A stretch of 64,000 nt of DNA from Macrostomum lignano (GCA_002269645.1 NIVC01002740.1:80182-144181); one strand, 5' to 3'. Numbered from the stretch's first letter, positions 31,035-56,900 are shown. Notes: generated by a model from the letters alone, not told the origin. Program-made: numbers and translations.

Positions 31035-32430
31035 AGAGAGGGAGAGAACAGCCAGTGTAAAAATAGGGTCACAGGAATGTACATTGGGGCAGAGAGGGAG
31101 AGAACAGCCAGTGTAAAAATAGGGTCGCAGGAATGTATATTGGGGCAGAGAGGGAGAGAACAGTCAGTGTAAAAATAGGGTCGCAGGAATGTACATTGGG
31201 GCAGAGAGGGAGAGAACAGCCTGTGTAAGAATAGGGTCGCAGGAATGTATATTGGGGCAGAGGGAGAGAACAGCCAGTGTAAAAATAGGGTCGCAGGAAT
31301 GTACATTGGGGCAGAGAGGGAGAGAACAGCCAGTGTAAGAATAGGGTCGCAGGAATGTATATTGGGGCAGAGAGGGAGAGAACAGTCAGTGTAAAAATAG
31401 GGTCGCTGGAATGTATATTGGGGCAGAGAGGGAGAGAACAGTCAGTGTAAAAATAGGGTCGCAGGAATGTACATTGGGGCAGAGAGGGAGAGAACAGCCT
31501 GTGTAAAAATAGGGTCGCAGGAATGTACATTGGGGCAGAGAGGGAGAGAACAGCCAGTGTAAAAATAGGGTCGCAGGAATGTACATTGGGGCAGAGAGGG
31601 AGAGAACAGCCAGTGTAAAAATAGGGTCGCAGGAATGTACATTGGGGCAGAGAGGGAGAGAACAGCCAGTGTAAAAATAGGGTCGCAGGAATGTACATTG
31701 GGGCAGAGAGGGAGAGAACAGCCTGTGTAAAAATAGGGTCGCAGGAATGTACATTGGGGCAGAGAGGGAGAGAACAGCCAGTGTAAAAATAGGGTCGCAG
31801 GAATGTACATTGGGGCAGAGAGGGAGAGAACAGCCTGTGTAAAAATAGGGCCGCAGGAATGTACATTGGGGCAGAGAGGGAGAGAACAGCCAGTGTAAAA
31901 ATAGGGTCGCAGGAATGTACATTGGGGCAGAGAGGGAGAGAACAGCCAGTATAAAAATAGGGTCGCAGGAATGTACATTGGGGCAGAGAGGGAGAGAACA
32001 GCCAGTGTAAAAATAGGGTCGCAGGAATGTACATTGGGGCAGAGAGGGAGAGAACAGCCAGTGTAAAAATAGGGTCACAGAAATGTACATTGGGGCAGAG
32101 AGGGAGAGAACAGTCAGTGTAAAAATAGGGTCGCAGGAATGTACATTGGGGCAGAGAGGGAGAGAACAGTCAGTGTAAAAATAGGGTCGCGGGAATATAC
32201 ATTGGGGCAGAGAGGGAGAGAACAGCCAGTGTAAAAATAGGGTCGCAGGAATATACATTGGGGCAGAGAGGGAGAGAACAGTCAGTGTAAAAATAGGGTC
32301 GCGGGAATATACATTGGGGCAGAGAGGGAGAGAACAGCCAGTGTAAAAATAGGGTCGCAGGAATATACATTGGGGCAGAGAGGGAGAGAACAGTCAGTGT
32401 AAAAATAGGGTCGCAGGAATATACATTGAG
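31035..32430. repeat. 56-bp minisatellite (AGAGAGGGAGAGAACAGCCAGTGTAAAAATAGGGTCGCAGGAATGTACATTGGGGC)
   Basis: Period 56 measured (31501 to 31557); about 25 copies. Confidence 0.97.
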
Positions 32431-33049
32431 GCGGTGTCTTGCTAAATATTTAGCAAAAAAGTGCTGTTAAACTGTGCAATAAAATTTATCTTTATTCATT
32501 TCTTTGTTCCATTTTCAAAGTCATGTGAATAACAGTATGTGGATCCCATTTCTGTTGCCAACGCAGCTATTTATATTTTGCAACCACTGAGTCTTTAAGT
32601 CTGACATTTTCATTAAGTCGGATCGTCACAGCCTGCAGCAATACTTTCCTCCGTAGGTCCTGGTGGATTGGCTGTATAAAATTTATTGTCCGTATTTTGT
32701 CATCAAAGCGTTATTATTGTATTGTGAAAGCTTTGACCGATTTTAAGTCACATTATGCGCTGTGCAATAATTTTACCAATGCTAATAAATATTGCAGTTC
32801 GGCATGCTCTTTTCTCAAAAATTTACCGTAACTGGCTCTTTAAGCCACAAACTATTAGCCTTAGTGTGTACACACATTTCATATATAATACACTATACAC
32901 GTTTGGGTGCTTAATGTTAAAATTTATTATACAATATTTGTTAAGCACTGTAATAAACTATACATTTTGGTCTTTAGAGTTGTGTTTTAAATTGCTGATC
33001 CTTCGGCTAATTTTTTTACCCGTCAATCAAACGGAGAGACGCACTCGCA

Positions 33050-33745
33050 TCAGCCGCGTGTTGAACTGTTAAAAGACTCGGGGGAGACATCAGTCAAGCC
33101 AGGTTCTTGGTTTAACCGAAGGGTGACCTTTTCATTACCAACTTCTACTCCACCGTTGTTGGGCTCCCCATCAGCCCATAGAGCGGCGCTTATACCCGGG
33201 CCGTGGCAACCCACCGCCAGCCTTCGCGCGGCTCGCCGCTGCCTTGAGTCTGGTAGCCACCCAGCCACACGGATCCGCCATCCGAGTACACGCTGCTGAA
33301 CTGCGAGTTGATGAAGCTCATCTCTGGCCATGATTACGAGACCGAACTCACTGTCGCACCCCTGCTTCTGCTTGCTCTGCTGCCAGTTGCCAGAGTTGGA
33401 GTACAGCTTGTACTTCACTCCCCACAGCTGCTCATTGTAGCCAGACGGACACAGCCTGCTTGGCTGCAGTCCCGCCTGCCTCCTCACGAACAGCCGACCA
33501 GTGGCTGAGCAGCTGCAGTTTCCCACCCGATGGGCATCTAGCCCCGTGAACTCGCTGTTGATGCGCAGGCTGTCGTTGACCGCCTTGAACGACAAGGCGG
33601 TGACGCCGCCAGGCAAGTAGCGGCCTGGAAGCCGAGGATTAGCACAATTAATAATAGAACGCAAGTCGAATGCATACAGTTGGTGCGGCTCTCTCAAGTC
33701 GATGTAAATTTTTGTGGGCTCCTTATTTGCTGGAATAGCGCGCGC
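33050..33745 (-). CDS. CUB-like + C-type-lectin-like protein (partial or truncated; possible pseudogene)
   Basis: Open frame from an AG acceptor at 33746-33747. SFKAVNDSLRINSEF resembles a CUB C-terminal strand. Then CPSGY...KYKLYSNSGNWQQSKQKQGC...LWADGEPNN (CTLD with EPN). The final CTLD Cys and WND motif are missing, and no 5' exon was identified. Confidence 0.5.
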   Translation of the reverse strand, partial: ARAIPANKEPTKIYIDLREPHQLYAFDLRSIINCANPRLPGRYLPGGVTALSFKAVNDSLRINSEFTGLDAHRVGNCSCSATGRLFVRRQAGLQPSRLCPSGYNEQLWGVKYKLYSNSGNWQQSKQKQGCDSEFGLVIMARDELHQLAVQQRVLGWRIRVAGWLPDSRQRRAARRLAVGCHGPGISAALWADGEPNNGGVEVGNEKVTLRLNQEPGLTDVSPESFNSSTRG

Positions 33746-34396
33746 CTAAACATCAACACAGCTTGGCGAATATGTTTCAATTGTCTTGCTTTGTCGCCGC
33801 GTTGTTTGCCTTCTACTTGATATAATAGAATATAGCATTTTAAATTGTTTACTAAAAATGGCAGCCATCCTTATATCGCCAGTGCTTGTTCGTGTGCAGG
33901 GACTTCTATAGAGATCCCTGTCTCAGTGGACTGGAGGCTAGAATAATTAAGTCAAACCCCAGTAAACGAACATAAATCGTTGTCATGCCAGCGACAAAAT
34001 GAAAGGGCCGTGTTTTATTTTAGTTTCCAGTCCACCGATTCCATTTCTAAAAGTCCCTGGCTTGGCTTGTGGTTGCCATCGTGAGTGGTTGTGAGTGACA
34101 CTTTAGACAATGCCTCTCAAGTAGGCTCGGCAAACCGGTAGGCTCGCTTGTCATCGAGTTTCTCAGTCAGAAATTCACGCATTCTCTATGGTCAACCCTA
34201 TCTTCATTCTGTAGACTTTCAACTCTGATGATTCTTGGACATTTGTCTATGGTTAAAGCAAGGTGAAAGGGCAGTTTTAGACTTACTTAATTAATTAATA
34301 GTTATCTTTGAGAGTGAGAATGATAATTAAGGGACTGCTTCTTCAATAGAAATTCGCTGAGGTATTAGAGCTAACAAGCTAGCTGCGACATCGAAC

Positions 34397-34907
34397 ATGC
34401 CCCGCATTTCTCTGCCGGCTCAAGTGCTGCTGATTGTGGCTGTCATTTTCGTTGGAAACGCTTGTGCCTGCAAAAAAGTCACCAAACCAATCAAGAAACT
34501 TTTTGCCAGTAAGTACACCATGTAGTAGTCAACTGTGTCTTATTACATCATTTGATCTGACCCGAATCAGTTAACTTACTATGGGTGTTTAAATCGCAGA
34601 CCCAAAAGTTACGGAGGTCGATGGGCACACCTGCTACACTAAGGAATCCATCCGGATTGACCAAGGCATGCCTGCCTACACTAACAATGGCATGGCTAAC
34701 GACTTGTCCGCTGATGCGTGCAAGAAATTCTGCAAAGACCAGGGCTTTAAAGGCAAAATTGTCGGGGTGACACCAACGGAGTGCCACTGCAACAAGTACA
34801 TGAAGTACGACGGCGCCAGAGAAGCCGACAAGTGTTCAATCCGTTGCCGGGGCAACGATCAGCAGTTTTGCGGCGGCCTTGGCTACGTGTCCGTGTACCC
34901 AGCTTAG
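34397..34907 (+). CDS. Secreted single-WSC-domain protein 1 (139 aa)
   Basis: Exons 34397-34508 and 34600-34907, phase-1 intron. Signal peptide (VLLIVAVIFVGNACA), then CKKVTKPIKKLFA, then the 8-Cys WSC pattern CY...CKKFC...TECHC...C.I.C.GNDQQFCGG.GY.SVY. Confidence 0.88.
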
Positions 34908-35596
34908 CTGAAGCCGCTGCACTGCACTGCACTCTATCTGTAGCCCATTGCCGAGTTGCTTTTGGACAGCCAATGCACTGTAGATCATATCGCTTAAAAT
35001 GGAGTCTTACTGGCCATATTTTATTTTATTGCTTTTCTTATTGTGTTAACGAGTCTGTATAGGTCTAAATGTGTAAGAATGTTTATTTCTATATACGTTG
35101 CTAAAATACTACCTTCTAAGACTACTTAAGACTAATGCTAATACTTGCTTTCTCGAGTCACTTACACGTATTAAAATTGCACGTGTGTTTTTCAGTACGT
35201 TTTAAAGGTATTAAAGTACAGAAAGCCCCTTACAAATGCGAAAGTCAACCTGAAGAAGTTAGGAATTCTTGACTGCTATGTGTTCTACCTGTTCTCACAT
35301 ACGAGTCAGAGTGCTGGACCATGTCACAATACCACCAGCAATGAAGAGCAGAATCGAGGTAATGGGGTTGCTCTGCTAAAAAGGAAGTTGATTACGAACA
35401 TTTAGAGACAGCAGTTGGAGTTTTTTGACCCTATTATGAGCTGTTTAATTGCTTAGGCCTTAGGACAAATAACAAAGAACGAACTAACACTAGAAGCTAA
35501 ATTTAGTAACAGACAGACAGTGATGCTTAAACGGTCGTAAAAAGTTGGAAGAGGCCATGACAGCCAGATTTTTTCTAAAGTACTCTCCAGAATAGT

Positions 35597-36490
35597 CTAC
35601 GCATCGTTGCGTCCTCTCAAACCACTTATTAAAGCAGCTGGACCACTATGAACTTGGCACCTCCTCGACATGCCCGATGAAGGCCTTGACTGCAGCTTCC
35701 GGTGATGAATAACGACTGCTACGCATCTTCCGCTTGATTTGCGGAAACACGGGCAAGAAGTCGCACGGGCCAGGTCTGGGCTGTAGGATGGACAAGCTGT
35801 TGAATGCGAATTCTCCAGCCAGGAATCCAACCACTTGCCTGGACTTGAAGGCGGAGGCGCGTTGTCGTGATGAAGAAGCACACCCCGAGCTCGAATCCTT
35901 GCACGGCAACTGGAGAGACAACTCAGTACTTCTGGCAGGCAGCAGTTGGTACACCAGTTGGCAGCGACGGTGCGCTGCTGCGCAAGTGGTACGGTCGCTA
36001 GATGACCAGCTTTCGCCACAAAAACGGCTACCACCTGCTTTGCCACACTGCATGCGCTGATCGTTTCAGCTTCAATGGTGTGGCGCCTCTAACTGGCGTC
36101 CACTTGTCCGAATGCTGCTTGTTCTCTGGGTCAAAACTTTTGCTCCAGGATTCATCACCACTGACGATTTCCCAGACCGAGTTTAAGCGGGGCTACCATC
36201 GAATCTGTCAAGCATGGCATGCCACCAAGCCACCCGAGCCTCCTTTTGCTCCTCCGTCAGGTGATGAGGCACCCAGCGTGCAGAAATCTTGCAGGATCGT
36301 GCGGATGGCTCCCGATGAGATGGCCACTTCTGCCTCTATCTAGGCCACAGTTATCCTGGCATCATCCTCAATCATGGCCCGAATGGCAGCAAAATTCTCA
36401 TCGCTGCGGAGTTGAGGCGGCCGCTGCGCTCTTCATTATTCAGACTCTGTCGGCCACGTGGAAATTCGGCAAGCCACTTTAGCAAGCCAT
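35597..36490 (-). pseudogene. Degenerate mariner (D,D34D) transposase
   Basis: Minus strand: RSGR, WVPHHL, IVSGDESW, LHHDNA, YSPDL(A)PCDF..FP.IK, with stops and frameshifts. TIRs not identified. Confidence 0.88.
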
Positions 36491-36806
36491 AAAAGCATTT
36501 ATGTTTCGAACAACAGCAAGGTTACAGTTGCAGATCTCATGAACATAGGCTTTTATAGTTTTGAATCTCAATCGAGAAAAGCGATCTGAATTTAATTTCA
36601 CAACAATTAATTTATTTATTATAATCTGACAATAAAATACGTAAATAATTAAAAGTGCTAATTAAATTAGTATCGCACTAAGCAAATTATTATAGCAGGA
36701 TAAGTAAAGCAGCAAAAAAAATTGCGCAAAAATACGAGCCAATAATCACAAAAACATAAGCTGTACTTTTTTTTAATTAACACCCGTTGTTTAGCAATCA
36801 GTGTCG

Positions 36807-38119
36807 CTACTTATTGAATCCCGCATTCACCTGGCCGCTACTACCGCTAGCCGTCACTGCAGCATCGTAGCTCGGAGGCGCGGCAGTGTACTGCGGGTAC
36901 TGCGGGTACTGTGGGGCTTGTGGGTACTGCGGCTGCGTCGGGTACGGCTGAGACCCCGCTGGGTACTGCGGCGCAGCGGGGTAGCTGCCGGCAGGCGGCG
37001 GGACCGTCACTTGACCGGCGCTGACCACGACGGAACTGGCGCCCTGGACCCGTCGGCGCGCCCGACTGCGCATGCCGGAGTAAATGCCGACCACGATGAG
37101 GCCGAACAAGAACAGGCCGCCGCCGACTAACGCGTAGACCCAAATGTTACTGCTGGTTGAATAGTAAGGATTGTAGGTGTTTGGCACGGTGTAAAACGTA
37201 CTCGTGCCGCCAGGAGGTGCGGAGCAGGCGAATTTGTTTCGATCGCTGCAGTCATCCATAAAAATTGCGTAATACGAGCTTTTGTCATTGAAAGTCCCAC
37301 AGCGTTCGTACGAATAGCAGCTGGACGAAGAGCCACCTGAGTAGCAGCTGATCTCCGACGTCCTAAAGCACAGGTGGTTCTGGAGTCAAACACAAGAGAA
37401 AGAGTGTAAATGTTAGATAAAAGGAAAAACGGATCTAGAAATTACCAGAATTGTAGCGTTCTACTCAGCCAGTAGTGCGAGAATCGAGCCGAGCGGTCGG
37501 TCAGTCCGATCCAAGTGTAGTAGCGCCTCAGGCTGTTCGGCAGCAGTCGCATGAACGAGCCAATGTTGTTGTAGTACGCAACCGGAACATGTAGGAGATT
37601 CGAGCGCATGCTGTTGCAAGCTCGCTGAGCGTCAAAGTAGTTCCGGCTGCTTTCAATGCTGTCAGTACCGTAGCAGGTGCCGCTGATGTACGTCCAGCCG
37701 GGAATGCAGCCGTTGAGGTCCATCGCTCGAACTCGGACTGTGACGCCTTCGCTGTTCGACTGGTCTCCGCTCGCATCAAAGCGGACCCTCAGCGACTTCG
37801 ATGGCGTCAAGATTTTGTGCTGGTAGTCCGGGATGCTGGAGCCGCTAAACAGCACCTCATCACCGGAGCTGATGGTGAACACTGCCGAGCTGACCTTGAA
37901 CGACTTGACTTCGACGAAGAATGCTCGATTAGGCGACTCCGCATTGAACTCGCAGCTCATTCCGGAGGAGTAGCTGGCCTCGTTTTTGCGTCTCGTAGTC
38001 AGGTAGAAGTCCGTCAGTGACGCGCTGACAATGGTAGGAGAGTCCGGGCTGCAGTAGAACTGCTGCTGTGCCGTGGCCGCCGCGACGAGGCATGCCAGAA
38101 GGACCAGCAGTTTGTGCAT
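36807..38119 (-). CDS. Type I membrane receptor: signal peptide-CUB-C-type lectin-TM-Pro/Tyr/Gln tail with PPSY
   Basis: Exon 1 38119-37446: MHKLLVLLACLVAAATA; CUB YSSGMSCEF...SLRVRFDAS; CTLD CIPGWTYISGTCY...YFDAQRAC...WIGLTD. 66-bp GT-AG intron 37445-37380. Exon 2 37379-36807: Cys-rich CTLD end, TM IWVYALVGGGLFLFGLIVVGIY, tail APPSYDAAV. The junction is 1 nt out of frame as assembled. Confidence 0.75.
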
Positions 38120-39553
38120 GCCGACTCTGTGTTGCATGTTTCTGTTTCCTATGGGTTTGCGTTTTGCCTCACTATCGGATTGAGTCTCATTTGCTAGCCG
38201 TTTCGACTGGCAATATATTGCTTCGAAAGACGAGTTTGCCGAGAGAGCTCTGATAAGATATGCCAAGTTATATTTAGTGTCTGGCTATGTACATCTGCGC
38301 TGACGAATGACATCGGCTGAAATTTAATGCTTGACAATTTGCTGAGCCACTTTCGATGATAATAATCACCGCACTTGATGATAAAATCGCAGTAGATAAC
38401 TCGTACAAACAAAAGGTGGACGCACTTGCAGTAAATTTTTGTTGCAGAGACCAACGTGCGTTGTCTTATCAATCAGTTTGCATGGATAGGCTGCTGCTTG
38501 GAAACCTGCATTGCCCAGTACCGACCTAAGCTGCATGGCCATTAGTTGAAGAAAAAGAGAAATGTCTCTGCAGGTCTTTCTCACTTTTGACTTACCGACC
38601 TACCAGTCATGCAAGTTACTTGTATGAATAATAAACTGTGCTATTCAGGACAGTACAATTTATTTTGCACTTTTGATGAGTCATTTTCATCACGACAAGA
38701 AGTCTTCTGATTGTACAAGATGTTTGAATTTTGAATTTGCAATTAGTTGGTGATGAAAGCAAGCACTATTCAGTAAAAAATGGGAAACTACGTCTGAAGG
38801 AACCTCGTTTGAGGTTGCATTTGTTGTGTGCACGAGCCTTCCGTAATTATAAAATATTGGCTTCTGATCTTGCTATTGGTGAACCAAAAGCATTGGTAGA
38901 CCGGTAGTCAGGTATCTACCCTTGGAAAATTGTGCAAAAAGTTCTATATAGTTTTGATATTTCTTTCAGGGTTCTTAGATATTTGATTATTTTTCGAAAT
39001 TCTCCCTATCCGAAATCTTGCAAGATCTTTCCAAGATTATAAAAGATTTGAGTCTGACAAAATCGTACAAAGACAAAAGTATCTTATCACAAGTTAGACA
39101 TCTACCGGTATTATACGCTCGTAAGAACACTTGTGGAAATCTTGCTTAGTCATGCTGGTGGACTGCACTTGCAAAATATCACCTAGAATGATTCTGCAGA
39201 ATGATCTACGAGCGTATAATTATTAACGTATATTTTTTCTAAGATTCTCAAAAGATAGCCATTAGGGTAAAATGTAGTACTTGCACTTTGACTCTTGTCT
39301 ACTAATGGTCGAAAAGTAGGAGCCCGAATATTTGGGATTTAGGCTTCAGTTTTAATAGCAATGTGGGCTCTCTGGGTTGGCTCGGTACTCTCTGCTTTGC
39401 ACTGGAGCGCTTCGTCTATGGCTCAAAGCCAGCCAAAGTCCAGGGCTGCTGGCAATACTGCGAACTAATCGTTTGCTATACTTGATAAACGTCTTCGCAG
39501 CCCGTAGGTTTTCTCTTTCGCAGAATTAACGTCAAGAGAAACAAACATTTGCG

Positions 39554-40144
39554 ATGTGGAATACGTCACGTTTTTTGCTGTCGTCTCAATTGCTGCTGCT
39601 GATTTTGGCTGTCATATTCGTTGGGAACACCAGCGCCTGCAAGAAAGTCACTAAACCAATCAAGAAATTATTTGCCAGTAAGTGATTTTAGCTGATTTTA
39701 TTAAAGAAAACTGGCTAAAGCTATGAATATGTAGAAATATCTTTGTGCACCCTTCCCAGCAGAAACCTAAGTCGCTTTTCAATGTATATGGACTGGCAAG
39801 GCTGACTAATTGTGTCTAACCATTTCAAATTCACAGATCCGAAAGTCACGGAGGTCGACGGGCACACCTGCTACACTCAGGAGTCCATCAGGATTGACGA
39901 AGGCGTCGCAGCCTTCACTAACGACAACATGGACAAAGACCTGTCCTTGGCTGAGTGCAAGAAGTTCTGCAAGGAGTCCGGCTTTGAAGGCAAAATTATC
40001 GGACTGACTCCGACCGAGTGCCACTGCAACAAGTACATGAAATACGACGGCAAGCGCGACAAGGAAAAATGCCCAATTAGGTGCAAAGGCAACGACCAGG
40101 ACTATTGTGGCGGCATTGGCTACATCTCGGTTTACCCCAGCTAG
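39554..40144 (+). CDS. Secreted single-WSC-domain protein 2 (143 aa)
   Basis: Exons 39554-39677 and 39837-40144. Same post-signal peptide CKKVTKPIKKLFA as protein 1; 28 differences in the 102 exon-2 residues by hand count. Confidence 0.9.
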
Positions 40145-40502
40145 AGGGGGCGATGCTTCTGTGAAAGCTGAACTAGCTACTGTAAACTAAATATTGGTGG
40201 ATTTTTGTTTAGTTATTTTAGACCCTTGCAGAACCCATCTGAGCTGAATTTCTTTTGCAGTCTGGTTATTTTCTGTTTCCTTAACTATTCATTAGGTAAA
40301 ACTGCAGTGTGCGATGAAGTATAGGATCTACTCCTAAATAAAATGTATTTCAAACTGAAGTTATAAGACTTCAATTCAACTTTTAAGAATTTAAAAAATA
40401 GGTTGCAGGTTATTTGTATTTAAGTTTAGTGAGGTGAAAGTTAATCAGTCAGTGTAATGAGCAACTTTTCTCACTAGATAACGCATTTTGTAGAGAATTA
40501 CG

Positions 40503-40690
40503 AGTATTTTGCTTCAGTTCACCCAGCCGTAAAATGGGTGCCAGCATTAGCTGGGGCAATTGAGGGTGTGTGGCGGCCCCCCCGTCCTTGGACTGAACAG
40601 CCGTACGCAGCCTTCAGATGCGCCGCGCAATAGCTGCGGCTGAGCTGTCGGTTGCACATCTGGCGATTAAAGCAGGTGTACTCACTTATT
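40503..40690 (-). mobile_element. Possible SINE fragment with Meta-domain-like core
   Basis: Minus strand GCTGGCACCCATTTTACGGCTGGGTGAACTGAAGCAA resembles, from memory, the conserved core of invertebrate MetaSINEs. Bounded by an (ATT/ATC)n tract. Confidence 0.3.
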
Positions 40691-41085
40691 ATTATTACTA
40701 TTATCATCACCATCATCAATTTGAAGAAGACTGCAGCTATCTACCACGAGCCATGCTGCATGCCCCGATACATAATACTGTAGTCTAAAAGCGGACCGTT
40801 AATAAGTTAAAGTTAAGGAGCATTCTGCATGAGATCACCGTATCAGTCTGGCCCGAATCAGACACTGGGTGTAATTTTTTAAGATGTCCCACTTTCTTTA
40901 GGAATTCGAATAATTTGTCTATGGTTGAATCGGTCGGTCAGTCTGTACAGATCTTTTTCGATATTAATTTGCCTAAGCTCTGCCTTCAACGCTTGCTTGG
41001 GCATAAAAAATTATTGAGTTGTAAATTATCAAGCCGCTGAGGCATCAACGAGTTCGTAGTACAAGGAGCCTTCACCTGCGGCGCC

Positions 41086-41580
41086 ATGTTAAATTTCCAA
41101 TTCATTGCTTGCCTCGTGGTTCTTCTGACCACCGTAGCGTCAGTTCAAGCCTGCCCGAGGAGCTTTGTGGCGATCAGAAATACGTTTAGCTGTAAGTTTT
41201 GTACAGGCTCCGTCCGTTTAACATAGAGTCCGTCCGTTTAAACATGACCACACTCCCACTGTCACGCTGTTCCAGCCCGAATCAAGACGCTTAACGGACC
41301 CAGCTGCTTCACCGAGCGGTCTTTGCGCACCGCAGGCGAAACGGAGGGCACCTACGACGAACTGAAGGAGACCATGACTCCCGACGCCTGCCGCAAGCTG
41401 TGCAAAGACAAGGGCCATTCGGCTAGCAGCATCATTGCGGTGTCGCAGACGCTGTGCCACTGCGACAAGAACTTCAAAAAGGAGGGCTTATCGGACGTTG
41501 CCAAATGCACGAACAGTTGCCCGGGCAATCTGGATGAGCGTTGCGGCGGTCCGGACTATCTGTCTGCCTATCCAGTGTAG
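41086..41580 (+). CDS. Secreted single-WSC-domain protein 3 (136 aa)
   Basis: Exons 41086-41191 and 41276-41580, phase-1 intron. Signal peptide, CPRSFVAIRNTFS, then WSC CF...CRKLC...LCHC...CTNSCPGNLDERCGGPDYLSAY. Confidence 0.88.
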
Positions 41581-42554
41581 GAGCCGCGCCTCGACAGTTT
41601 GCTCAAATATAAGTTTTAGAGCATGGATGGACACCTAGCTATAGTCTGCGATACAAGTTAAGAGACAATTTTTTAGCTATCGTACTACCGAGTGAATTCT
41701 TTGTTTTAACTAACGGTAATAAATTACCACCATTCTATATATCATTTTTAAAATAAACCTGCACATTTGGCGGCCATCCAGATTTTTTTATATTTCCAAC
41801 AGGCACTACTAAACATACTGAAATATACTTGAAGTATAAGACGCTGGAGACAAATAGTATAGAGAGCTCTGCAAAGCGAGTTCACTTTTACTGCAGCTTA
41901 AAATTGCACTACTCAACTGACAAGGATGTTCTAGAAATTTCCAATCCAGAATTCAAGCATTGGCCTGCGAAACAATAAGGACTCCAAGACCAAGGATCCC
42001 ATACGAGAACATGGACTGCCCATATGGGTGGGGTATAAAGTGAAGTTCACTTCCTCAGTTCGAACTTCTAATGATGCTCTCCGTAATAAATGTGAACAGG
42101 AAATCTTGGATCATAAAGTTTCGAATTTTAAAAACCTTGCTGCAGAGAGGATAAAGTATATTTACCTAGTAACTTTAAAAGATCGAGACACAATGTAAAT
42201 TCTAGCAAAAGTGATCAGAGACATAGATTTTTACTCTCGATACGTCATTATTCACCACCTTCTTGTGATTACTTTTTGTACACTGTGAAAATCAATTGGT
42301 ACTTACGAGGCGTGTCCGGAAAGCAGTGTTAACTTTGACGAGGTTGCGCAAATGACCAAACTTGACGACGATGTAATAAGCATCCGGTTTGTATAACCAT
42401 CGCTAATCCTGCATGTACTTTAAGCTGATTTGAGTTGTCTATGACCGAGCTTTAGCCACGTGGCTTTGGCTTAAAACACGAAAAAATTATTGGGTCAAGG
42501 TTAAGCTTGACAATTCATAACAGTAGAGAAAGAGAGCCATCATAAAAAGTTGGC

Positions 42555-43063
42555 ATGGCGCATCGTTTAATCATTTTAGTATTCACCTGTGGAGTCATTC
42601 TGCTTAGCAACGTTGCCGAAGTGCATGGCTTCACCCGGGCTTTTGTAGCCTTGAAAAACATGGTCTCATGTAAGCTTGTTCAGCTGTTGTCTGATTCTGT
42701 CTTGATGACGCAAATGCAAGTCCGTCTCTGTTTGAATTCCTAGCCCGGACGCACTCCGTACTCGGTCCATCCTGCTTCACACTGAGATCCCTGAGAACTG
42801 TCGGCTCAAACGAGGGCACGTACAATAACTCCATGGTGCAGTCGTTCAAGTCCTGCCGCAACCTGTGCAAAAAGAAAGGCCACGAACAGACTGACATCAT
42901 CGCGATTGAGGTCGACTTGTGCCACTGCGGCAAGGAGTTCCGCAAAAACGGCCGGGCGGACGTCAACAAGTGCTTGCACAGCTGCCCTGGCCGGATCGAG
43001 GAGCGCTGCGGAGGGCCCGGCCACATCTCCGCTTATCCATACGATATGAAAATTGACTACTAA
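42555..43063 (+). CDS. Secreted single-WSC-domain protein 4 (144 aa)
   Basis: Exons 42555-42669 and 42744-43063, phase-1 intron. Signal peptide, FTRAFVALKNMVS, then WSC CF...CRNLC...LCHC...CLHSCPGRIEERCGGPGHISAY. Confidence 0.88.
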
Positions 43064-43586: not shown

Positions 43587-46500
43587 TTAGAGAATGCCGA
43601 ACCGCTCCAGGTGTTTGTCGATTATAAAAGCGCGACAGCCTTCCAGCACTTTCTTCACATTGTCGGTGTTGACGGCGCAGGTGTAGTAATAGCAGCAGGT
43701 GTGATGGTGGTACTCGAATTTGAAATCAGCCTGGCGCTTTCGTTTCGCTATTTCCTGAAGTAGAGTTCGAGAAGTTTGAGAACAGTTTGAGAATTTCTTT
43801 AGCATTCGATTCTTAAGAAAAAAAGGAATTGATTCTATCGCCCAATATACAGACAGGCTTTTGGTCTCACTGAAAGGCACCCGAGGCTAAATTGACAGTC
43901 AAAGTCTCAATGTCCCGTTGACAGACACTACATGGTATATTGGGTTTAATTGAGTGTCACACTTCCAATGTCCCGTTGACAGAAATGTAGCATTAATTAG
44001 CTAGTAGCGAGCCCCATTTTGACCATAGACAATATTCTCAAGCTGTTTCTCGTACTGTATCTAAAATCGAGTAAAGCCGAGGCGAGAGTTTACAACCTTT
44101 CTTTCTCACTTACGCCAAAGTTAACTCCACGATTTGCGATTTGATTCATTCGCTACAAAGTGGTAGCAGAGCGTTTTTCGGACCGAAAACAACGCCACCT
44201 ATCCGTGATCACTGAATTTGTCAGCGACATCGTTCACATCGCCGGTAGGGACAACGTGGTTGCCGATGCACTATCTCGTCCCAACCTCACGTCCGAGGCG
44301 CAGCCACCATCGTCCGTAAGACTGCTAGCCGACATCCCGCCCTCGGTGGATTTGCCAGCTATCGCTCGAGCCCAGAAAGACAGTCTACCCGCCAACGACC
44401 CGCCAGTAGGACAGTTCAGCAACTTCGATATCGGGATTAAAGACTACCCATTACACTGTGAGACTTCGCAAACTAACCCGCGTCCCGTAGTCCCTGAAGT
44501 ACTACTACGTGCGGTGTTCAACTCGCTGCATTCGTTCGCACACCCCGGCAGAAAAGCTACGCAACGGCTCATTAGCTATCGCTTCTTTAGGCCGCTAATG
44601 AGTGCCGACATTCGCAAGTGGGTAGCCGAGTGCCAACAATGCCAGAAGTACAAGACTGGACGACTTGTGTAACGCCCACTGCAGCAGCTGCCTGTGCCAT
44701 CTCAGAGATTCACGACGGTACACATTAACCTGGTCGGACCGCTAACGCCTCCTGAATCTGAAGATCCTGACCCGAAGCCTCGCTACCTACTCACCATGAT
44801 CGATGCCTACTCACGCTGGTTCGAAGCAGCACTGCTTTCGAACATTGCCGCCACATCAGTCGCACGAGCCTTCCTGGAAACCTGGATTTCTCGGTTCGGC
44901 CCACCTTTGACGCTGATCAGTGACCAGGGATCCCAATTCCGAGCGGAGCTCATGAAGAACTTGAAGGGCCTACTCGGCATTCACCACATCCGCAATTCAG
45001 CCTATAATCCGAGAGAGAGCTAACGGTATCATCGAACGTGCACACCGGACGCTATAGGTCGGTTTGAAGGCGCGCGGCAAGAACTGGCTGCAGCAGCTGC
45101 CCGTCGTGCTCCTGGGCATGCGCATTTTCCCAGATGAGTCAGGTGCCTCTCCGTTCTCCGTTGTTACGGGTGAGCAACCGCTGGTCCCACCGCTCGTCAC
45201 CGACACGTCTGCGCTCAAGGAGCTCTCGACTAGTCTACACCAGCTTTTCTTCCCATACCGGCAGCCGAGAACGTGCGAGATAGCCGTGCATCTGCCAGCC
45301 GCGCTGAGGTCGTACACACACGTCTGGCTACGGTTGGACCGTCTGGCTACGGTTGGACCGTGTGCGACGACCCCTGGAGGCTCCTTACCAAGGCTCGTAC
45401 GCGGTGCTGGACAGGCACGACACCAAAATGACACTCCAGATCAACGGCAAGCCTACCGTAGTGTCGATCGATCGTGTCAAGCCCGCCACCCTGCCAACAG
45501 CCCATCAAGAGCAGCCAGCAGCCACACTGGCCCCGCCAAGCGACGCTCCCGCCTCTAACACAAGGTCGCGCAGCTCAAACCGCGCGATTCAAGAGCGAGA
45601 CCTCCGCGCAAGTCCTCCAGGAAGGACAGTCCACCTAGCAATACTTGAACAGTGCTTTAACCGATCAACCTATGACATCAGCATTGCTTGCCTACTCGTT
45701 CCCCTTCGCTGTTCAAACTTTTTGTCTCTGATTATCTAATGCATAGTGATGTACTTCATCTAGGAGGGGGAGTATCTTTTAGCATTAATTAGCTAGTAGC
45801 GAGCCCCATTTTGACCATGGACAATATTTTCAAGCTGTTTCTCGTTTACTGTATATAAAATCGAATAAAGCCGAGGCGGGCCGAGCCGAGAGTTTACAAA
45901 ATTTCTTTCTCACTTACGCCAAAGTTAATTCCACTGCGCTTTGATTCACTCGCTACAGACACTATAGTGGGTTTAATTGACAGTCACACTCCCAATGTCC
46001 CGTTGACAGACACTATATTCGGTTTAGTTGACAGTCACACTCCCAATGTCCCGTTGACAGACACTATATTCGGTTTAGTTGACAGTCACACTCCCAATGT
46101 CCCGTTGACAGACACTATATTCGGTTTAGTTGACAGTCACACTCCCAATGTCCCGTTGACAGACACTATATTCGGTTTAGTTGACAGTCACACTCCCAAT
46201 GTCCCGTTGACAGACACTATATTCGGTTTAGTTGACAGTCACACTCCCAATGTTCCGTTGACAGACACTATAATCGGTTTAGTTGACAGTCACACTCCCA
46301 ATGTCCCGTTGACAGACACTATATTCGGTTTAGTTGACAGTCACACTCCCAATGTCCCGTTGACAGACACTATATTCGGTTTGACAGTCAGGTTCTGATG
46401 GGTACGTTGGTACATGTAGCTATCTCGAACTTACCATAAAGATATTTTTCACAAAACAGGCAGTCTTGACAGTGTCAGGGTGAACTTTCGGCAGGTCCTG

Positions 46501-49500
46501 CTGCTGCTGCTGCTGCTGCTTGCCGCGTTTCTTCTTCTTGCCCGGTTCAGCCGACCCTCCGGCTGCTGCTGCAGGCTTGACTGCAGTATTGGCAGCAGCT
46601 GCAGTAGAATCAGAAGGTGCGTTCGTTAGCAAAGCCTTTTGCTGCGCCACCTGCTGCTGAGGTGACTGCTGCTGAAGGCCGTTTCCGTTCTGCGGCGTTG
46701 GGCCGTCGGCGTTTGCCGCCGCCGCAGCAGCCGCCGCGGCTGCCATTTCCTCAAGTCTGGGGAATGCGTCGAGAAATTCTCGCCGCTCCTCCTCTGCAAA
46801 GAATGATGAGAATCTGTTTTTGTTTGTTGACTGTTTTCTTCACCACCAACGCCGCCAGCGTACAAGTGACCGGTGCCCGTTCCATCCCCTGCAAAGCTAC
46901 CCTTGGTACCAGAGAAGGCACAAAAGTCATCTCATCCCAGAGTGGCCAATAACCATCCCAGAGTGGCAAACAACCATCCCAGAGTGGCCAACAACCATCC
47001 CAGAGTGGCCAACAACCATCCCAGAGTGGCCAACAACCATTCCAGAGTGGCCAACAACCATCCCAGAGTGGCCAACAACCATCCCAGAGTGGCCAACAAC
47101 CATTCCAGAGTGGCCAACAACCATTCCAGAGTGGCCAACAACCATTCCAGAGTGGCCAACAACCATTCAAGAGTGGCCAACAACCATTCCAGAGTGGCCA
47201 ACAACCATCCCAGAGTGGCCAACAACCATCCCAGAGTGGCCAACAACCATTCCAGAGTGGCCAACAACCATTCCAGAGTGGCCAACAACCATTCCAGAGT
47301 GGCCAACAACCATTCAAGAGTGGCCAACAACCATTCCAGAGTGGCCAACAACCATTCCAGAGTGACAAAAAACCATTCCCTTCTATCCCTGGGAGACATA
47401 TGAAGCATTTAAAACCAAAAGCCGACAACCAAAGCAGTAGAAAATGAATCAAAGTCTCATCATGCAAGGCGAACCAGACTGAACAGAGCCCAAGAGTGCC
47501 TAAACAAAACTGTCAAGCTATTTCGACCCTACCATTGGCCAACAGAAATACTTTCTGTTCGACTTTTTATGCAAATTTTCTACTTGTCTGCTCTGACACA
47601 AGCCAACCAGCCGGACCCAGAATAAACAGGTTTAGATGAGCTCCGACGGTTGCTTTGCTAGTGGGTTCGCTGCCTGAACTCCATGGCAACGGTAGAGATT
47701 TTATGAATCCAAACCCTGTGTTTTCTCACTAAAGCAGGGCGAGGAAAAATGCCGCTAGAACGGACTACCGACCGTACACTCAGTTTTAAGTCCGCATTTA
47801 ATCGGCATTTTTCGTTAACAAAACAGCCGATCTGAGTCTTGTCTAAGATTAAGAATCTTTCACTTGGTTTTCACTTCACAATCTCACGGTTGCTGAGCTA
47901 ATAAATTTTTGAGCTTGTGATCGCCCACCGTTCGACTGCTCTTACCGGATGGCACGAAGCGGTCAAAGTCCAGCTGGCTGATGAACCGCACGAGGTCCAA
48001 CGGTCCGATGTGCTTCTTTTTCTGCTTCTGAGACGCAGCTTCTGCTGTTGCAGTCGACGCTCTGCCAATTACAGTCGGAACTGTTGAAAGCTTGCAGCTC
48101 CGACGACGGTGCATCACTGGATGTTCGTCGCTGTCGTTCTGGTGCGAAGACCCGGCAGAATCAGCAGCAGCCACAGTTGCCGCCGTCGCTTCCATTTCGA
48201 TTGTCTGCCTGCAGTGAGTCAGCATCGTTTCCAGCGACTTGCCCGCCCTGATCTTCTCCTCCAGTTGGTCAATCTTGTTGATAAACAACAACACGGACAC
48301 GTCCTGCAGGTAGCGGTTCAGCCACACCTCCTGGAACGTGTCGAGCGACTCCAACAGCCGATTCTTTGGTCGCTCAATGCCGACATCTTCTTTCAACGTC
48401 AGGTCGAAGCTGCTTACGTCGCACAAGTAGAGAATGGCGGTGACGTTGTTGAAACACTGAATCCATTTCTTTCGCTCGCCCTTCTGTCCGCCAACGTCGT
48501 AGACTCTGGTTTTTGAAGGGTTTGAATTTGATGAAGTGCTGGAACTTGACAACATCACATCAATATGAGCGGCTCTTGACTTCCTACTCTCGGCTAGGTA
48601 TTCAGACATGTCACTCAGTAGGCCTCGAAACAACTGTGCTACTTTTCGAGTCGCGAAAAGCTCACAAAAGGGCAGTAAATTCTTGGCAACGAGAAAGCCA
48701 ATTCTGTTGTACATCTTGGAAGCAAATATTCGTGTGTTTGCCTGTTTGCTTTTGGTGAAGACAAAATTCGGGGTTGACTTGCGCACAGAAGGACGGTGCA
48801 TGTTTCAACAAGCATTGCACCAAAGTCCAGACTCTAGAGTATCCACAGCACGTATTAATTATTTCTTTCCTACGTCGTATCTGTATCCCTTTACCCTTTC
48901 TGCGGTCCCTCACTCCCCTGTTCCTAATATATGCACTAATAATTTGTCAATAAATCTTGATTCCAATATTTGTTCACCTGAACTTTGCCGTATGATTTCC
49001 ATCCTTGATCTCGAAGCGAATATCCGTGATATTGTTTGTCATGATTCGGCAACGCAGAATGTCCTGATCCGTGGGTGTGTAGGTCTTGTTTTTGAATAGG
49101 TGAATCCTGTCCAAAAAGCTGGAAAATTAACGGTTTTTGGTGTTATCAAATATCAGAACTAAACAGATTTTTGTTCAGCAATAAGAAGACTCAAAAGTAA
49201 AAAGAAGCATTAACCACTAACTATTTAGCACAATCAATGAGCTGATAGCGATTTGAGTTTCGAAAGCTCTCCTGAACACCCGGATCCTGCCACAGGCGTT
49301 CAGCTGCGCGAAAGAATCGACTCGAATAAACGAACGGGTCCAGGTCCGCTCGGGACGCGTTGTGCGCCTGGTTGTCGGTCATCTGCTGCAGCAGCCACGC
49401 GCCCATTTCGGCGGCCTCCTCGCTGCCGAATGGGATGCCCAACTTGTCCATGGCCGCCACAATGCACTGCGAGTTTTGGTTTCAGCAAACAAATATGAAT

Positions 49501-52107: not shown

Positions 52108-52900
<793 letters not shown>

Positions 52901-53975: not shown

Positions 53976-56900
53976 ATCAAACAGACACAGAAATCTGTTC
54001 CAGTTGTGTCTGTAGGTTAGGCGGACCACCTTCCGAGAGCAAAAGCCTCAAACAGACTGAGAGAGCTGCTTCAGTTGTGTTTGTAGGTTATGTGGACCAC
54101 CTGAGAGCCAGAGCCTAAACAGACAGAGAAATCTGTTCGAGTTATGTCTGTAGGTTAGGTGGACCAGCTACTCCACAGCACTTCTAGGCGATAATCTGAG
54201 CCAGGAGTCTCCGAGAGCCTCTCGTTACACATCCAGATGTTCTGCCTTGATGCTGGACTAGCTCACTTTCTAGGAATATGTTCTGATTGCATTCTAACAA
54301 ACTGAAGCATTTTCTGCACTAAACTTTCTCGGCGGCTCTGAGAGCCAGAGCCCCAAACAGACAGAGAAATCTGTTCGAGTTGTGTCTGTAGGTTAGGTGG
54401 ACCAGCTACTCCACAGCACTTCTAGGCGATAATCTGAGCCAGGAGTCTCCGAGAGCCTCTCGTTACACATCCAGATGTTCTGCCTTGATGCTGGACTAGC
54501 TCACTTTCTAGGAATCTGTTCTGATTGCATTCTAACAAACTGAAGCATTTTCTGCACTAAACTTTCTCGGCGGCTCTGAGAGCCAGAGCCTCAAACAGAT
54601 AGAGAAATCTGTTCGAGTTGTGTCTGTAGGTTAGGTGGACCAGCTACTCCACAGCACTTCTAGGCGATAATCTGAGCCAGGAATCTCCGAGAGCCTCTCG
54701 TTACACATCCAGATGTTCTGCCTTGATGCTGGACTAGCTCACTTTCTAGGAATCTGTTCTGATTGCATTCTAACAAACTGAAGCATTTTCTGCACTAAAC
54801 TTTCTCGGCGGCTCTGAGAGCCAGAGTCTAAACAGACAGAGAAATCTGTTCGAGTTGTGTCTGTAGGTTAGGTGGACCAGGTACTCCACAGCACTTCTAG
54901 GCGATAATCTGAGCCAGGAGTCTCCGAGAGCCTCTCGTTACACATCCAGATGTTCTGCCTTGATGCTGGACTAGCTCACTTTCTAAGAATCTGTTCTGAT
55001 TGCATTCTAACAAACTGAAGCATTTTCTGCACTAAACTTTCTCGGCGGCTCTGAGAGCCAGAGCCTCAAACAGATAGAGAAATCTGTTCGAGTTGTGTCT
55101 GTAGGTTAGGTGGACCAGCTACTCCACAGCACTTCTAGGCGATAATCTGAGCCAGGAATCTCCGAGAGCCTCTCGTTACACATCCAGATGTTCTGCCTTG
55201 ATGCTGGACTAGCTCACTTTCTAGGAATCTGTTCTGATTGCATTCTAACAAACTGAAGCATTTTCTGCACTAAACTTTCTCGGCGGCTCTGAGAGCCAGA
55301 GCCTCAAACAGACAGAGAAATCTGTTCGAGTTGTGTCTGTAGATTAGGTGGACCACCCTCTGAGAGCAAAAGCCTAAAACAGACTGAGAGAGTTGCTTCA
55401 GTTGTGTTTGTAGGTTATGTGGACCACCTAAGAGCCAGAGCCTCAAACAGACAGAGAAATCTGTTCGAGTTGTGTCTGTAGGTTAGGTGGATCAGCTACT
55501 CCACAGCACTTCTAGGCGATAATCTGAGCCAGGAGTCTCCGAGAGCCTCTCGTTACACATCCAGATGTTCTGCCTTGATGCTGGACTAGCTCACTTTCTA
55601 GGAATCTGTTCTGATTGCATTCTAACAAACTGAAGCATTTTCTGCACTAAACTTTCTCGGCGGCTCTGAGAGCCAGAGCCCCAAACAGACAGAGAAATCT
55701 GTTCGAGTTGTGTCTGTAGGTTAGGTGGACCAGCTACTCCACAGCACTTCTAGGCGATAATCTGAGCCAGGAGTCTCCGAGAGCCTCTCGTTACACATCC
55801 AGATGTTCTGCCTTGATGCTGGACTAGCTCACTTTCTAGGAATCTGTTCTGATTGCATTCTAACAAACTAAAGCATTTTCTGCACTAAACTTTCTCGGCG
55901 GCTCTGAGAGCCAGAGCCTCAAACAGATAGAGAAATCTGTTCGAGTTGTGTCTGTAGGTTAGGTGGACCAGCTACTCCACAGCACTTCTAGGCGATAATC
56001 TGAGCCAGGAATCTCCGAGAGCCTCTCGTTACACATCCAGATGTTCTGCCTTGATGCTGGACTAGCTCACTTTCTAGGAATCTGTTCTGATTGCATTCTA
56101 ACAAACTGAAGCATTTTCTGCACTAAACTTTCTCGGCGGCTCTGAGAGCCAGAGCCCCAAACAGACAGAGAAATCTGTTCGAGTTGTGTCTGTAGGTTAG
56201 GTGGACCAGCTACTCCACAGAACTTCTAGGCGATAATCTGAGCCAGGAGTCTCCGAGAGCCTCTCGTTACACATCCAGATGTTCTGCCTTGATGCTGGAC
56301 TAGCTCACTTTCTAGGAATCTGTTCTGATTGCATTCTAACAAACTGAAGCATTTTCTGCACTAAACTTTCTCGGCGGCTCTGAGAGCCAGAGCCTCAAAC
56401 AGACAGAGAAATCTGTTCGAGTTGTGTCTGTAAATTAGGTGGACCACCCTCTGAGAGCAAAAGCCTAAAACAGACTGAGAGAGTTGCTTCAGTTGTGTTT
56501 GTAGGTTATGTGGACCACCTAAGAGCCAGAGCCTCAAACAGATAGAGAAATCTGTTCGAGTTGTGTCTGTAGGTTAGGTGGATCAGCTACTCCACAGCAC
56601 TTCTAGGCGATAATCTGAGCCAGGAGTCTCCGAGAGCCTCTCGTTACACATCCAGATGTTCTGCCTTGATGCTGGACTAGCTCACTTTCTAGGAATCTGT
56701 TCTGATTGCATTCTAACAAACTGAAGCATTTTCTGCACTAAACTTTCTCGGCGGCTCTGAGAGCCAGAGCCCCAAACAGACAGAGAAATCTGTTCGAGTT
56801 GTGTCTGTAGGTTAGGTGGACCAGCTACTCCACAGCACTTCTAGGCGATAATCTGAGCCAGGAGTCTCCGAGAGCCTCTCGTTACACATCCAGATGTTCT

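What the first reader, a model, noticed from the sequence alone, without database searches (positions are those of the whole stretch)
34397..43063. Tandem family of four small secreted stand-alone WSC-domain genes
Seen: four co-oriented two-exon genes with the same phase-1 intron, each encoding signal peptide + short basic peptide + one complete 8-Cys WSC domain and nothing else. They form two subfamilies (1/2 about 73% identical in exon 2; 3/4 related to each other). None is captured whole by the ORF track. Established: WSC is a putative carbohydrate-binding module (fungal Wsc1 sensors and beta-glucan-binding effectors, Kremen, polycystin-1, xylosyltransferase), usually embedded in large proteins in animals. 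Inference: a lineage-specific secreted lectin-like effector family, e.g. antifungal/mucus defence or a glandular/seminal-fluid secretion.
Basis: partly seen in the sequence, partly recalled or inferred. Interest (0 to 1): 0.82.

Follow-up and report, generated by a model that had tools for sequence, protein, structure and literature searches.

The report
Four tandem secreted WSC-domain flatworm genes
The window, from the flatworm Macrostomum lignano, really holds four neighbouring two-exon genes for small secreted proteins made of one WSC (sugar-binding type) domain, but they are already annotated and belong to a protein class known to be abundant in this worm's prostate secretions, so the find is real but fairly ordinary.

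Summary
Observation confirmed. The window is the last 64 kb of Macrostomum lignano contig NIVC01002740.1. Four + strand genes (34397-34907, 39554-40144, 41086-41580, 42555-43063) each have exon 1 (signal peptide and start of a basic peptide), a GTAAGT phase-1 intron, and exon 2 (one 8-Cys WSC domain, then a stop). My spliced proteins are identical to GenBank PAA55529, PAA55531, PAA55532 and PAA55533, whose models are transcript-derived. All four pass Pfam WSC. A model of gene 3 matches only the solved WSC structures (yeast Wsc1, Kremen1).

The array is intact in two further assembly copies, with dN/dS about 0.1-0.3. A genomic contig from another sample carries a homologue with the same intron position.

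Interpretation partly supported. "Secreted, lectin-like, lineage-restricted" fits, but the function is untested. About 27 of 76 published prostate-limited (putative seminal-fluid) transcripts of this species have WSC-type hits, so a seminal-fluid role is the leading guess. However, the four genes are not among the 18 such transcripts that have published gene IDs, and their expression site remains unknown.

New details: a family-specific C-H-C motif, a conserved Cys at the likely mature N-terminus, and a shared upstream GTCTATG 7-mer.

Verdict: new members of a known kind, modest interest.

The parts
34397..34508 (+). g1 exon 1 (Mlig027865.g2, PAA55529.1): ATG, signal peptide, start of basic peptide
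34509..34599 (+). g1 intron, 91 nt, GTAAGT...CAG, phase 1
34600..34907 (+). g1 exon 2: rest of basic peptide, WSC domain, stop
   Evidence: WSC 40.5 bits
35170..35175 (+). g1 candidate poly(A) signal ATTAAA, 263 nt after the stop
39554..39677 (+). g2 exon 1 (Mlig020127.g3, PAA55531.1)
39678..39836 (+). g2 intron, 159 nt, GTAAGT...CAG, phase 1
39837..40144 (+). g2 exon 2: WSC domain, stop
   Evidence: 39.7 bits
40337..40342 (+). g2 poly(A) signal AATAAA, 193 nt after the stop
41086..41191 (+). g3 exon 1 (Mlig002939.g3, PAA55532.1)
41192..41275 (+). g3 intron, 84 nt, GTAAGT...CAG, phase 1
41276..41580 (+). g3 exon 2: WSC domain, stop. This is the sequence modelled with AlphaFold2
   Evidence: (41.7 bits)
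41718..41723 (+). g3 poly(A) signal AATAAA, 138 nt after the stop
42555..42669 (+). g4 exon 1 (Mlig022985.g3, PAA55533.1)
42670..42743 (+). g4 intron, 74 nt, GTAAGC...TAG, phase 1
42744..43063 (+). g4 exon 2: WSC domain plus 6-residue C-terminal extension, stop
   Evidence: 33.7 bits
43256..43261 (+). g4 poly(A) signal AATAAA, 193 nt after the stop
34245..34252 (+). GTCTATGG, 152 nt upstream of the g1 ATG: candidate shared cis-element (a lead only)
   Evidence: The homeologue has TTCTATGG
39414..39421 (+). GTCTATGG, 140 nt upstream of the g2 ATG
40917..40924 (+). GTCTATGG, 169 nt upstream of the g3 ATG
42437..42444 (+). GTCTATGA, 118 nt upstream of the g4 ATG

Best explanation
The locus is an old tandem array of four independently transcribed Macrostomum lignano genes.

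What each gene makes (shown): a cleavable signal peptide sends the product into the secretory pathway. The mature protein is about 12.4-13.3 kDa and basic (pI 8.1-9.1). It consists of a ~20-residue cationic N-terminal peptide followed by one WSC domain and nothing else.

Fold (inferred): the WSC domain has a PAN/apple-like fold. By homology to yeast Wsc1 it is locked by four disulfides, C1-C6, C2-C4, C3-C5 and C7-C8. In g1 these would be C49-C116, C78-C99, C82-C101 and C120-C128.

Mechanism (inferred): the proteins are released from a gland as soluble lectin-like binders. The rigid WSC module would dock on a glycan-rich target surface and the cationic tail would add affinity for anionic surfaces. 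Three of the four proteins carry a ninth, unpaired Cys at the predicted mature N-terminus. This could link two chains covalently and make the binder bivalent.

Tissue (inferred): the prostate gland and seminal fluid is the leading candidate, at roughly 40-45%. Secreted WSC proteins are the largest recognisable class among this species' prostate-limited transcripts. The targets would then be glycans of the partner's antrum, of sperm or of eggs.

Status of the steps: gene structure, secretion signal, domain identity and purifying selection are shown. Ligand, tissue and dimerisation are inferred.
For: - Gene models equal transcript-derived GenBank proteins.
- Each gene has its own stop codon and poly(A) signal.
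- Pfam WSC is above the cut-off for all four.
- The AlphaFold2 model of g3 exon 2 (pLDDT 71.5) matches only Wsc1 7PZ2 (TM 0.64-0.66) and Kremen1 5FWS-5FWV (TMq 0.57-0.63) with probability about 1. PAN/apple modules come next, with E-values above 1.
- Sequence profile hits to the same two solved WSC structures.
- There is a single N-terminal hydrophobic core and (-3,-1) cleavage candidates.
- The array order g1-g4 and intact ORFs are kept in loci L001 and L002. Window versus L001 (my pooling of the four genes): 18 synonymous and 11 non-synonymous differences over about 373 and 1310 sites, omega about 0.17. Paralogue omega is 0.24 (g1/g2) and 0.28 (g3/g4).
- The homologue in SRR31628403 has the same phase-1 intron position and an A|CPKK N-terminus.
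- WSC modules bind beta-glucan, and Kremen1 shows they can also mediate protein contacts (PMC9024836).
- About 27 of 76 prostate-limited transcripts have WSC-type best hits.
- RNA815_80.4 / Mlig-pro5 (2 x WSC) is prostate-specific by in situ hybridisation, and its knock-down abolishes staining by the prostate-specific antibody MPr-1 (PMC4490696).
- Mlig-pro46, a candidate from the seminal-fluid RNAi screens, is described as homologous to human WSCD2 (PMC6953679).
Against: - No expression data for these four genes could be reached.
- Their IDs are absent from the 18-transcript Mlig-pro to Mlig_3_7 table. The primers for Mlig-pro46, Mlig-pro63 and RNA815_80.4 do not match the window.
- The prostate gene RNA815_80.4 has a different exon structure and lacks the GTCTATG motif.
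- Omega of 0.1-0.3 is not the fast evolution often seen in seminal-fluid proteins.
- The aromatic residue between C4 and C5 is His in this family. It is Y/F/W in 77% of 781 other WSC domains. Its Wsc1 equivalent, Y70, lies in a functional surface aromatic cluster. Canonical WSC surface chemistry may therefore be altered.
- Signal-peptide cleavage was judged by simple rules only, not by SignalP.
- Only one of five AlphaFold2 models was confident, and the first attempt failed.
Confidence: 0.6

Rival explanations
1. Same proteins, but in a non-reproductive secretion. They would be soluble pattern-recognition or mucus lectins from epidermal, rhabdite, pharyngeal or gut glands. They would bind microbial or fungal cell-wall polysaccharides (beta-glucan, chitin), with the cationic N-terminal peptide aiding attachment to microbial surfaces.
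For: - Fungal WSC modules bind beta-1,3-glucan (SiWSC3; PMC9024836).
- The mature proteins are basic, with a +3 to +5 N-terminal peptide.
- They evolve under moderate purifying selection rather than rapidly.
- The array also contains a C-type-lectin transmembrane gene at 36807-38137.
- The genes are not in the mapped subset of prostate transcripts.
Against: - No expression or binding data exist.
- No precedent was found in the searched literature for non-prostate WSC proteins in Macrostomum (one search returned only the prostate paper).
- The prior from the prostate transcript list favours the reproductive reading.
Confidence: 0.3
2. The WSC module works here as a protein-binding ligand or decoy, as the Kremen1 WSC contributes to Dickkopf binding, rather than as a lectin. 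The small proteins would act as secreted signalling ligands or antagonists.
For: - Kremen1 is among the closest solved structures by sequence and by fold.
- PAN/WSC domains mediate protein-protein contacts.
- The conserved aromatic residue between C4 and C5 is replaced by His in every family member.
- The N-terminal Cys and basic peptide are conserved across species.
Against: - Similarity to Kremen1 is only at domain level (15-20% identity in the structural alignment).
- There is no Kringle or CUB context.
- Multiple diverged tandem paralogues are more typical of secreted binders or effectors than of dedicated signalling ligands.
Confidence: 0.12
3. The eight exons are pieces of one larger multi-WSC transcript, or the genes are decaying pseudogene copies.
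For: - M. lignano does have polycistronic precursor transcripts that are cut by trans-splicing.
- Most WSC proteins found in the exhaustive search are multi-domain.
Against: - There are four separate GenBank genes with different cluster names.
- Every unit starts with ATG plus a signal peptide, ends in a stop directly after the domain, and is followed by a poly(A) signal.
- All ORFs are intact in three assembly copies, with dN/dS below 1.
- The homologue in another sample has the same stand-alone two-exon layout.
Confidence: 0.02

Closest known systems
Macrostomum lignano prostate-limited WSC transcripts (putative seminal-fluid proteins), e.g. Mlig-pro5 = RNA815_80.4 (Mlig005381/Mlig024181) and Mlig-pro46 = RNA815_16008.2
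   Same: Same species. They are secreted proteins built only of WSC domain(s), and each WSC domain sits on its own exon behind a signal-peptide exon. Some are short enough to hold only one WSC domain, for example transcripts RNA815_29683.1, 38600.1 and 39357.
   Different: - They are different genes. The IDs are not shared and the primers are absent from the window.
- RNA815_80.4 has two WSC domains, at least three exons and a ~0.9-kb first intron, and its locus lacks the GTCTATG motif.
- It aligns to g1 at only 17-22% identity.
- Prostate expression is shown for those transcripts and unknown for the window genes.
Yeast Wsc1 cysteine-rich domain (PDB 7PZ2) and fungal WSC lectins such as Serendipita indica WSC3
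   Same: Best structural match (TM 0.64-0.66, probability 1.0). It shares the eight Cys and the CGG motif. The beta-glucan-binding precedent comes from fungal WSC lectins.
   Different: - Wsc1 is a membrane-anchored mechanosensor, and WSC3 has three WSC domains. The window proteins are soluble single-domain proteins.
- About 24% identity in the structural alignment.
- The Y70-equivalent aromatic residue of aromatic cluster 2 is His here.
Human Kremen1 WSC domain (PDB 5FWS-5FWW)
   Same: Best sequence-profile hit among solved structures (E about 4e-4) and second-best fold match (TMq 0.57-0.63). It is an animal WSC domain.
   Different: Kremen1 is a Kringle-WSC-CUB transmembrane receptor whose WSC domain takes part in protein binding (Dkk1/LRP6). 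The window proteins have no Kringle, CUB or transmembrane segment.
Multi-WSC secreted proteins of other invertebrates (e.g. oyster 'putative fungistatic metabolite' or 'plasminogen'-named proteins; P0011 type)
   Same: Animal, secreted and WSC-only or WSC-rich. These are the top non-family hits of the family profile, but at 45 bits or less per domain.
   Different: They carry 3-23 WSC repeats, and some also have a Kringle domain. The window proteins have one domain plus a conserved N-terminal Cys and basic peptide.

Membership tests
WSC domain (Pfam PF01822) | Profile match above the curated gathering score over the whole domain | tested here: met
   40.5, 39.7, 41.7 and 33.7 bits against a cut-off of 27.8, covering profile positions 3/4-82 of 82
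WSC domain (Pfam PF01822) | Eight conserved cysteines and the CGG motif | tested here: met
   C49, C78, C82, C99, C101, C116, C120, C128 and G129-G130 are invariant in all four genes and their homeologues. The same columns are Cys in at least 757 of 781 other WSC domains for C4 and C5
WSC domain (Pfam PF01822) | PAN/apple-like alpha/beta fold as in Wsc1 and Kremen1 | tested here: met
   AlphaFold2 model of g3 exon 2 has pLDDT 71.5. The Foldseek top six hits are all Wsc1 or Kremen1, with probability 0.99-1.0 and TM 0.57-0.66. Caveat: only one of five models was confident, and the full-length g1 run failed
WSC domain (Pfam PF01822) | Aromatic residue between C4 and C5 (part of the surface aromatic cluster in Wsc1) | tested here: not met
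   His in all family members. It is Y/F/W in 605 of 781 other domains, and His is not among the eight commonest residues. This is a typical feature rather than a defining one, so membership stands, but the surface chemistry differs
WSC domain (Pfam PF01822) | Carbohydrate binding | not testable with these tools
   Needs recombinant protein with glycan arrays or pull-downs
M. lignano putative seminal-fluid proteins (Mlig-pro1-76, Weber et al. 2018) | Listed among the Mlig-pro transcripts | tested here: inconclusive
   Absent from the 18 Mlig-pro entries that have Mlig_3_7 IDs. The other 58 are given only as RNA815 IDs without sequences. The four IDs are in no searchable main text or held supplement
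M. lignano putative seminal-fluid proteins (Mlig-pro1-76, Weber et al. 2018) | Prostate-limited in situ hybridisation signal and tail-specific, socially plastic expression | not testable with these tools
M. lignano putative seminal-fluid proteins (Mlig-pro1-76, Weber et al. 2018) | Evidence of secretion (signal peptide) | tested here: met
   Single N-terminal hydrophobic core and (-3,-1) cleavage candidates, with no other hydrophobic segment. SignalP was not run

The most novel reading that the evidence does not exclude
The cysteine at the predicted mature N-terminus, followed by basic residues (A|CKKV, A|CKKV, A|CPRS, and A|CPKK in the homologue from another sample), may be a functional handle.

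- One option is an acceptor for N-terminal lipidation, of the kind known for Hedgehog and Spitz ligands (this comparison rests on my own knowledge). That would make these proteins membrane-tethered lectin-like ligands.
- The other option is an intermolecular disulfide that builds covalent bivalent WSC dimers able to cross-link glycans on sperm, eggs or the partner's tract.

Either way the family would be a distinct functional variant of WSC proteins rather than just minimal copies.
Probability: 0.08. Interest if true: 0.6.

Novelty: new member of a known kind. Interest (0 to 1): 0.3.

Why it matters
If these four genes are prostate products, they add a compact and easily manipulated sub-family to the WSC-rich seminal fluid of a hermaphrodite model for sexual conflict. 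Each gene has one domain and two exons, and M. lignano has working RNAi and transgenesis. Single-domain WSC proteins are also convenient reagents for finding out what animal WSC modules bind, which is still poorly known. Beyond that, the locus is a routine lineage-specific tandem gene family. It does not open a long-standing question.

Tried and rejected
1. The four Mlig gene IDs were searched in all main texts and in the supplements of Brand 2020, Grudniewska 2018 and Cirulis 2023. There were no hits, so no expression data were obtained.
2. Word-indexed homologue searches returned almost nothing beyond M. lignano. The third search, with a broadened alignment, was unproductive.
3. AlphaFold2 on the full-length 8-sequence alignment failed (pLDDT 39.8) and was not used. 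Only the exon-2 run was used.
4. I tested whether the known prostate WSC gene RNA815_80.4 shares the upstream GTCTATG motif or the exon structure. It shares neither, so co-regulation could not be argued.
5. The primers of Mlig-pro46, Mlig-pro63 and RNA815_80.4 are not in the window.
6. ORF 33050-33697 (- strand) carries a 'WADGEPNN' string and looked like a second C-type lectin. It has no Pfam hit and no similarity to the neighbouring C-type-lectin gene, so this idea was rejected.
7. Significance of the GTCTATG motif: 2 of 20000 shuffles if the four promoters are independent, but a shared 7-mer is common (about 80% of shuffles) if only two independent lineages are counted. It is kept only as a lead.
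8. The bacterial promoter/terminator scan is irrelevant for a eukaryote.
Full report
[quoted passage not shown] The window is the last 64 kb of contig NIVC01002740.1 of assembly GCA_002269645.1. That annotation was made solely from RNA-seq and transcript assemblies (StringTie/TACO, experimentally defined trans-splice and poly(A) sites, TransDecoder; PMC5730564). Identity between my models and the deposited proteins therefore counts as transcript support for the junctions.

**Checking the observation.** I enumerated all GT..AG pairs that keep the frame open. In each gene a single strong donor (GTAAGT, or GTAAGC in g4) pairs with a polypyrimidine-AG acceptor, giving a phase-1 intron of 91, 159, 84 and 74 nt.
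- Exon 1 encodes the start codon, a hydrophobic core (Kyte-Doolittle 2.9-3.7 over 11 residues, with no other hydrophobic stretch) and small residues at -3/-1.
- The intron interrupts a ~20-residue peptide with net charge +3 to +5.
- Exon 2 encodes the rest of that peptide, one WSC domain and a stop.
- Pfam WSC (PF01822) is hit at 33.7-41.7 bits (cut-off 27.8) over essentially the whole profile.
- g1/g2 are 73% identical, g3/g4 52%, and cross-pairs 26-33%.
- tblastn finds no further copy in the window.
- Each stop is followed within 138-263 nt by AATAAA or ATTAAA.

**Are they real, maintained genes?** Two more copies of the locus exist in the assembly.
- L001 (NIVC01001115.1) has g1-g4 in the same order. 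A Shc-like PID/SH2 gene lies upstream and a G-alpha gene downstream, as in the window.
- L002 (NIVC01001114.1) starts inside the array and is 99.6% identical to L001.
- The window and L001 are 93-97% identical at DNA level. This fits homeologous copies in this neopolyploid species, which is an inference (PMC10733133 is listed).
- All ORFs and intron positions are intact. Pooled over the four genes there are 18 synonymous and 11 non-synonymous differences (omega about 0.17). Paralogue comparisons give omega 0.24 (g1/g2, dS 0.74) and 0.28 (g3/g4, dS saturated).

The array is therefore old and under purifying selection.

**Relatives elsewhere.** A profile of the four exon-2 peptides was scored against 1.84 billion representative proteins and found 1619 WSC proteins.
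- Per-domain scores fall from 157-168 bits within the family to 45 bits or less for the best other WSC domain among the 150 listed proteins.
- The one exception is P0073 (91 bits), from a 938-bp genomic contig of run SRR31628403.
- Reading that contig shows a complete two-exon homologue of 146 aa, 38-40% identical to g1/g2. It has the phase-1 intron at the same position, the same '...YPA stop' end, and a Cys followed by basic residues after the likely cleavage site (A|CPKK).
- I could not identify the organism of that run.

**Fold.** A first AlphaFold2 run on full-length proteins failed (pLDDT 39.8). A second run on g3 exon 2 gave pLDDT 71.5 and pTM 0.65 for the best model only.
- Foldseek against the PDB returned yeast Wsc1 (7PZ2, TM 0.64-0.66) and human Kremen1 (5FWS-5FWV, TMq 0.57-0.63) as the six top hits, with probability about 1. 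PAN/apple modules followed with E-values above 1.
- The same two proteins are the only sequence-profile hits among solved structures.
- By homology to Wsc1 (disulfides C27-C86, C49-C69, C53-C71, C90-C98; PMC9024836), the eight cysteines should pair C1-C6, C2-C4, C3-C5 and C7-C8.

**Family-specific features.**
1. The residue between C4 and C5 is His in every member. It is Y/F/W in 605 of 781 other WSC domains. In Wsc1 this position (Y70) belongs to a surface aromatic cluster needed for function.
2. g1, g2, g3 and the SRR31628403 homologue have a ninth Cys at the predicted mature N-terminus. g4 does not. The cleavage sites come from simple rules, not from SignalP.
3. The 7-mer GTCTATG lies on the sense strand 118-169 nt upstream of all four start codons. 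As GTCTATGR it occurs 9 times in the window against 3.45 expected. Any 7-mer shared by all four promoters occurs in 2 of 20000 shuffles. The test is not significant if the two paralogue pairs count as only two lineages. The g1 homeologue has TTCTATGG. This is a lead for a shared regulatory element, no more.

**What they probably do.** WSC modules are rigid PAN-like binding domains. They have documented beta-glucan binding in fungal lectins and protein binding in Kremen1.

The species-specific literature is more informative.
- The prostate-specific transcript RNA815_80.4 encodes two WSC domains, and its knock-down abolishes staining by a prostate-specific antibody (PMC4490696).
- In the screen that defined 76 prostate-limited transcripts (putative seminal-fluid proteins), I count about 27 with WSC-type best hits, 13 of them explicitly named WSC. 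These include several short enough to hold a single domain (PMC5977470 Table S1).
- One of them, Mlig-pro46, a candidate from the seminal-fluid RNAi screens, is described as homologous to human WSCD2 (PMC6953679).

A small secreted WSC-only protein in this worm therefore has a substantial prior of being a prostate product.

Against that:
- The four gene IDs are not in the only available Mlig-pro to gene-ID table, which covers 18 transcripts.
- Published primers do not match the window.
- The RNA815_80.4 locus shares neither the exon plan nor the upstream motif.

I could not reach any expression data. I therefore put the seminal-fluid reading at roughly 40-45%, a non-reproductive secretory or immune lectin role at about 30%, and a protein-ligand role at about 12%.

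**Novelty and verdict.** The genes are already in GenBank and UniProt, three of them as 'WSC domain-containing protein'. Secreted WSC proteins are a described class in this animal. This is a new, uncharacterised sub-family of a known kind, with a few features worth a bench test: the C-H-C motif, the conserved N-terminal Cys with its basic peptide, and the shared upstream motif. Interest is modest (0.3).

Noticed in passing
window 36807-38137 (- strand), between g1 and g2: A two-exon gene (83-nt intron 37363-37445) encoding a signal peptide, a C-type lectin domain (Pfam 24.3 bits, cut-off 22.6), a transmembrane helix and a Pro/Tyr/Gln-rich tail with PPSY. GenBank annotates it as 426 aa, starting at 38170 with no ATG there (likely 5'-partial), with no Pfam family on record. 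A second carbohydrate-binding-type gene therefore sits inside the WSC array.
   Followed up: partly
window ~35600-36450: A degenerate mariner/Tc1-like transposase remnant ('LHHDNAPP' motif, broken frames, no Pfam hit) between g1 and the lectin gene. The homeologous locus aligns through it, so the insertion is old.
   Followed up: partly
window 43983-46283: A 2.3-kb stretch just downstream of g4 that is absent from homeologous loci L001 and L002. It holds an Integrase_H2C2 ORF (44160-44672, 56 bits) and a 51-bp tandem repeat (45955-46382). It looks like a retroelement fragment inserted in this copy only.
   Followed up: partly
window 54101-63717: A 238/475-bp satellite array (about 98% matches) runs for about 9.6 kb almost to the contig end. 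This probably explains why the assembly stops there.
   Followed up: no
window 3889-32432 (many sites) and 52108-52900: Unusually dense minisatellites, for example 8253-9185, 9468-10415, 11277-12885, 13556-14793, 21865-22900 and 31035-32432, plus (AGAC)n at 52108-52900. Several lie inside the introns of the Shc-like gene.
   Followed up: no
window 15434-15610: Three exact GTCTATGG/CCATAGAC sites and one CCATAGAG lie within about 170 bp in non-coding DNA. The core is the same as the motif upstream of the four WSC genes. This could be a binding-site cluster or a coincidence.
   Followed up: no
window 1938-3539 (+): A 533-aa ORF with a hAT-family C-terminal dimerisation domain (27.5 bits), which looks like a hAT transposase gene.
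   Followed up: no
L005 (Logan SRR31628403 contig, 1-938): A genomic contig from an unidentified sample with a complete two-exon homologue of g1/g2 (exons 106-238 and 376-683). The automatic gene call captured only the last 85 aa.
   Followed up: partly
L004 8841-10615 (NIVC01000084.1): The GenBank model for the prostate gene RNA815_80.4 (P0158, 171 aa) starts at an internal Met. The published transcript shows an upstream signal-peptide exon about 0.9 kb away, so the deposited protein is N-terminally truncated.
   Followed up: partly
window 46933-47379: A 21-bp tandem repeat (21 copies, 96% matches) near the G-alpha gene. It is also present in the homeologous loci.
   Followed up: no
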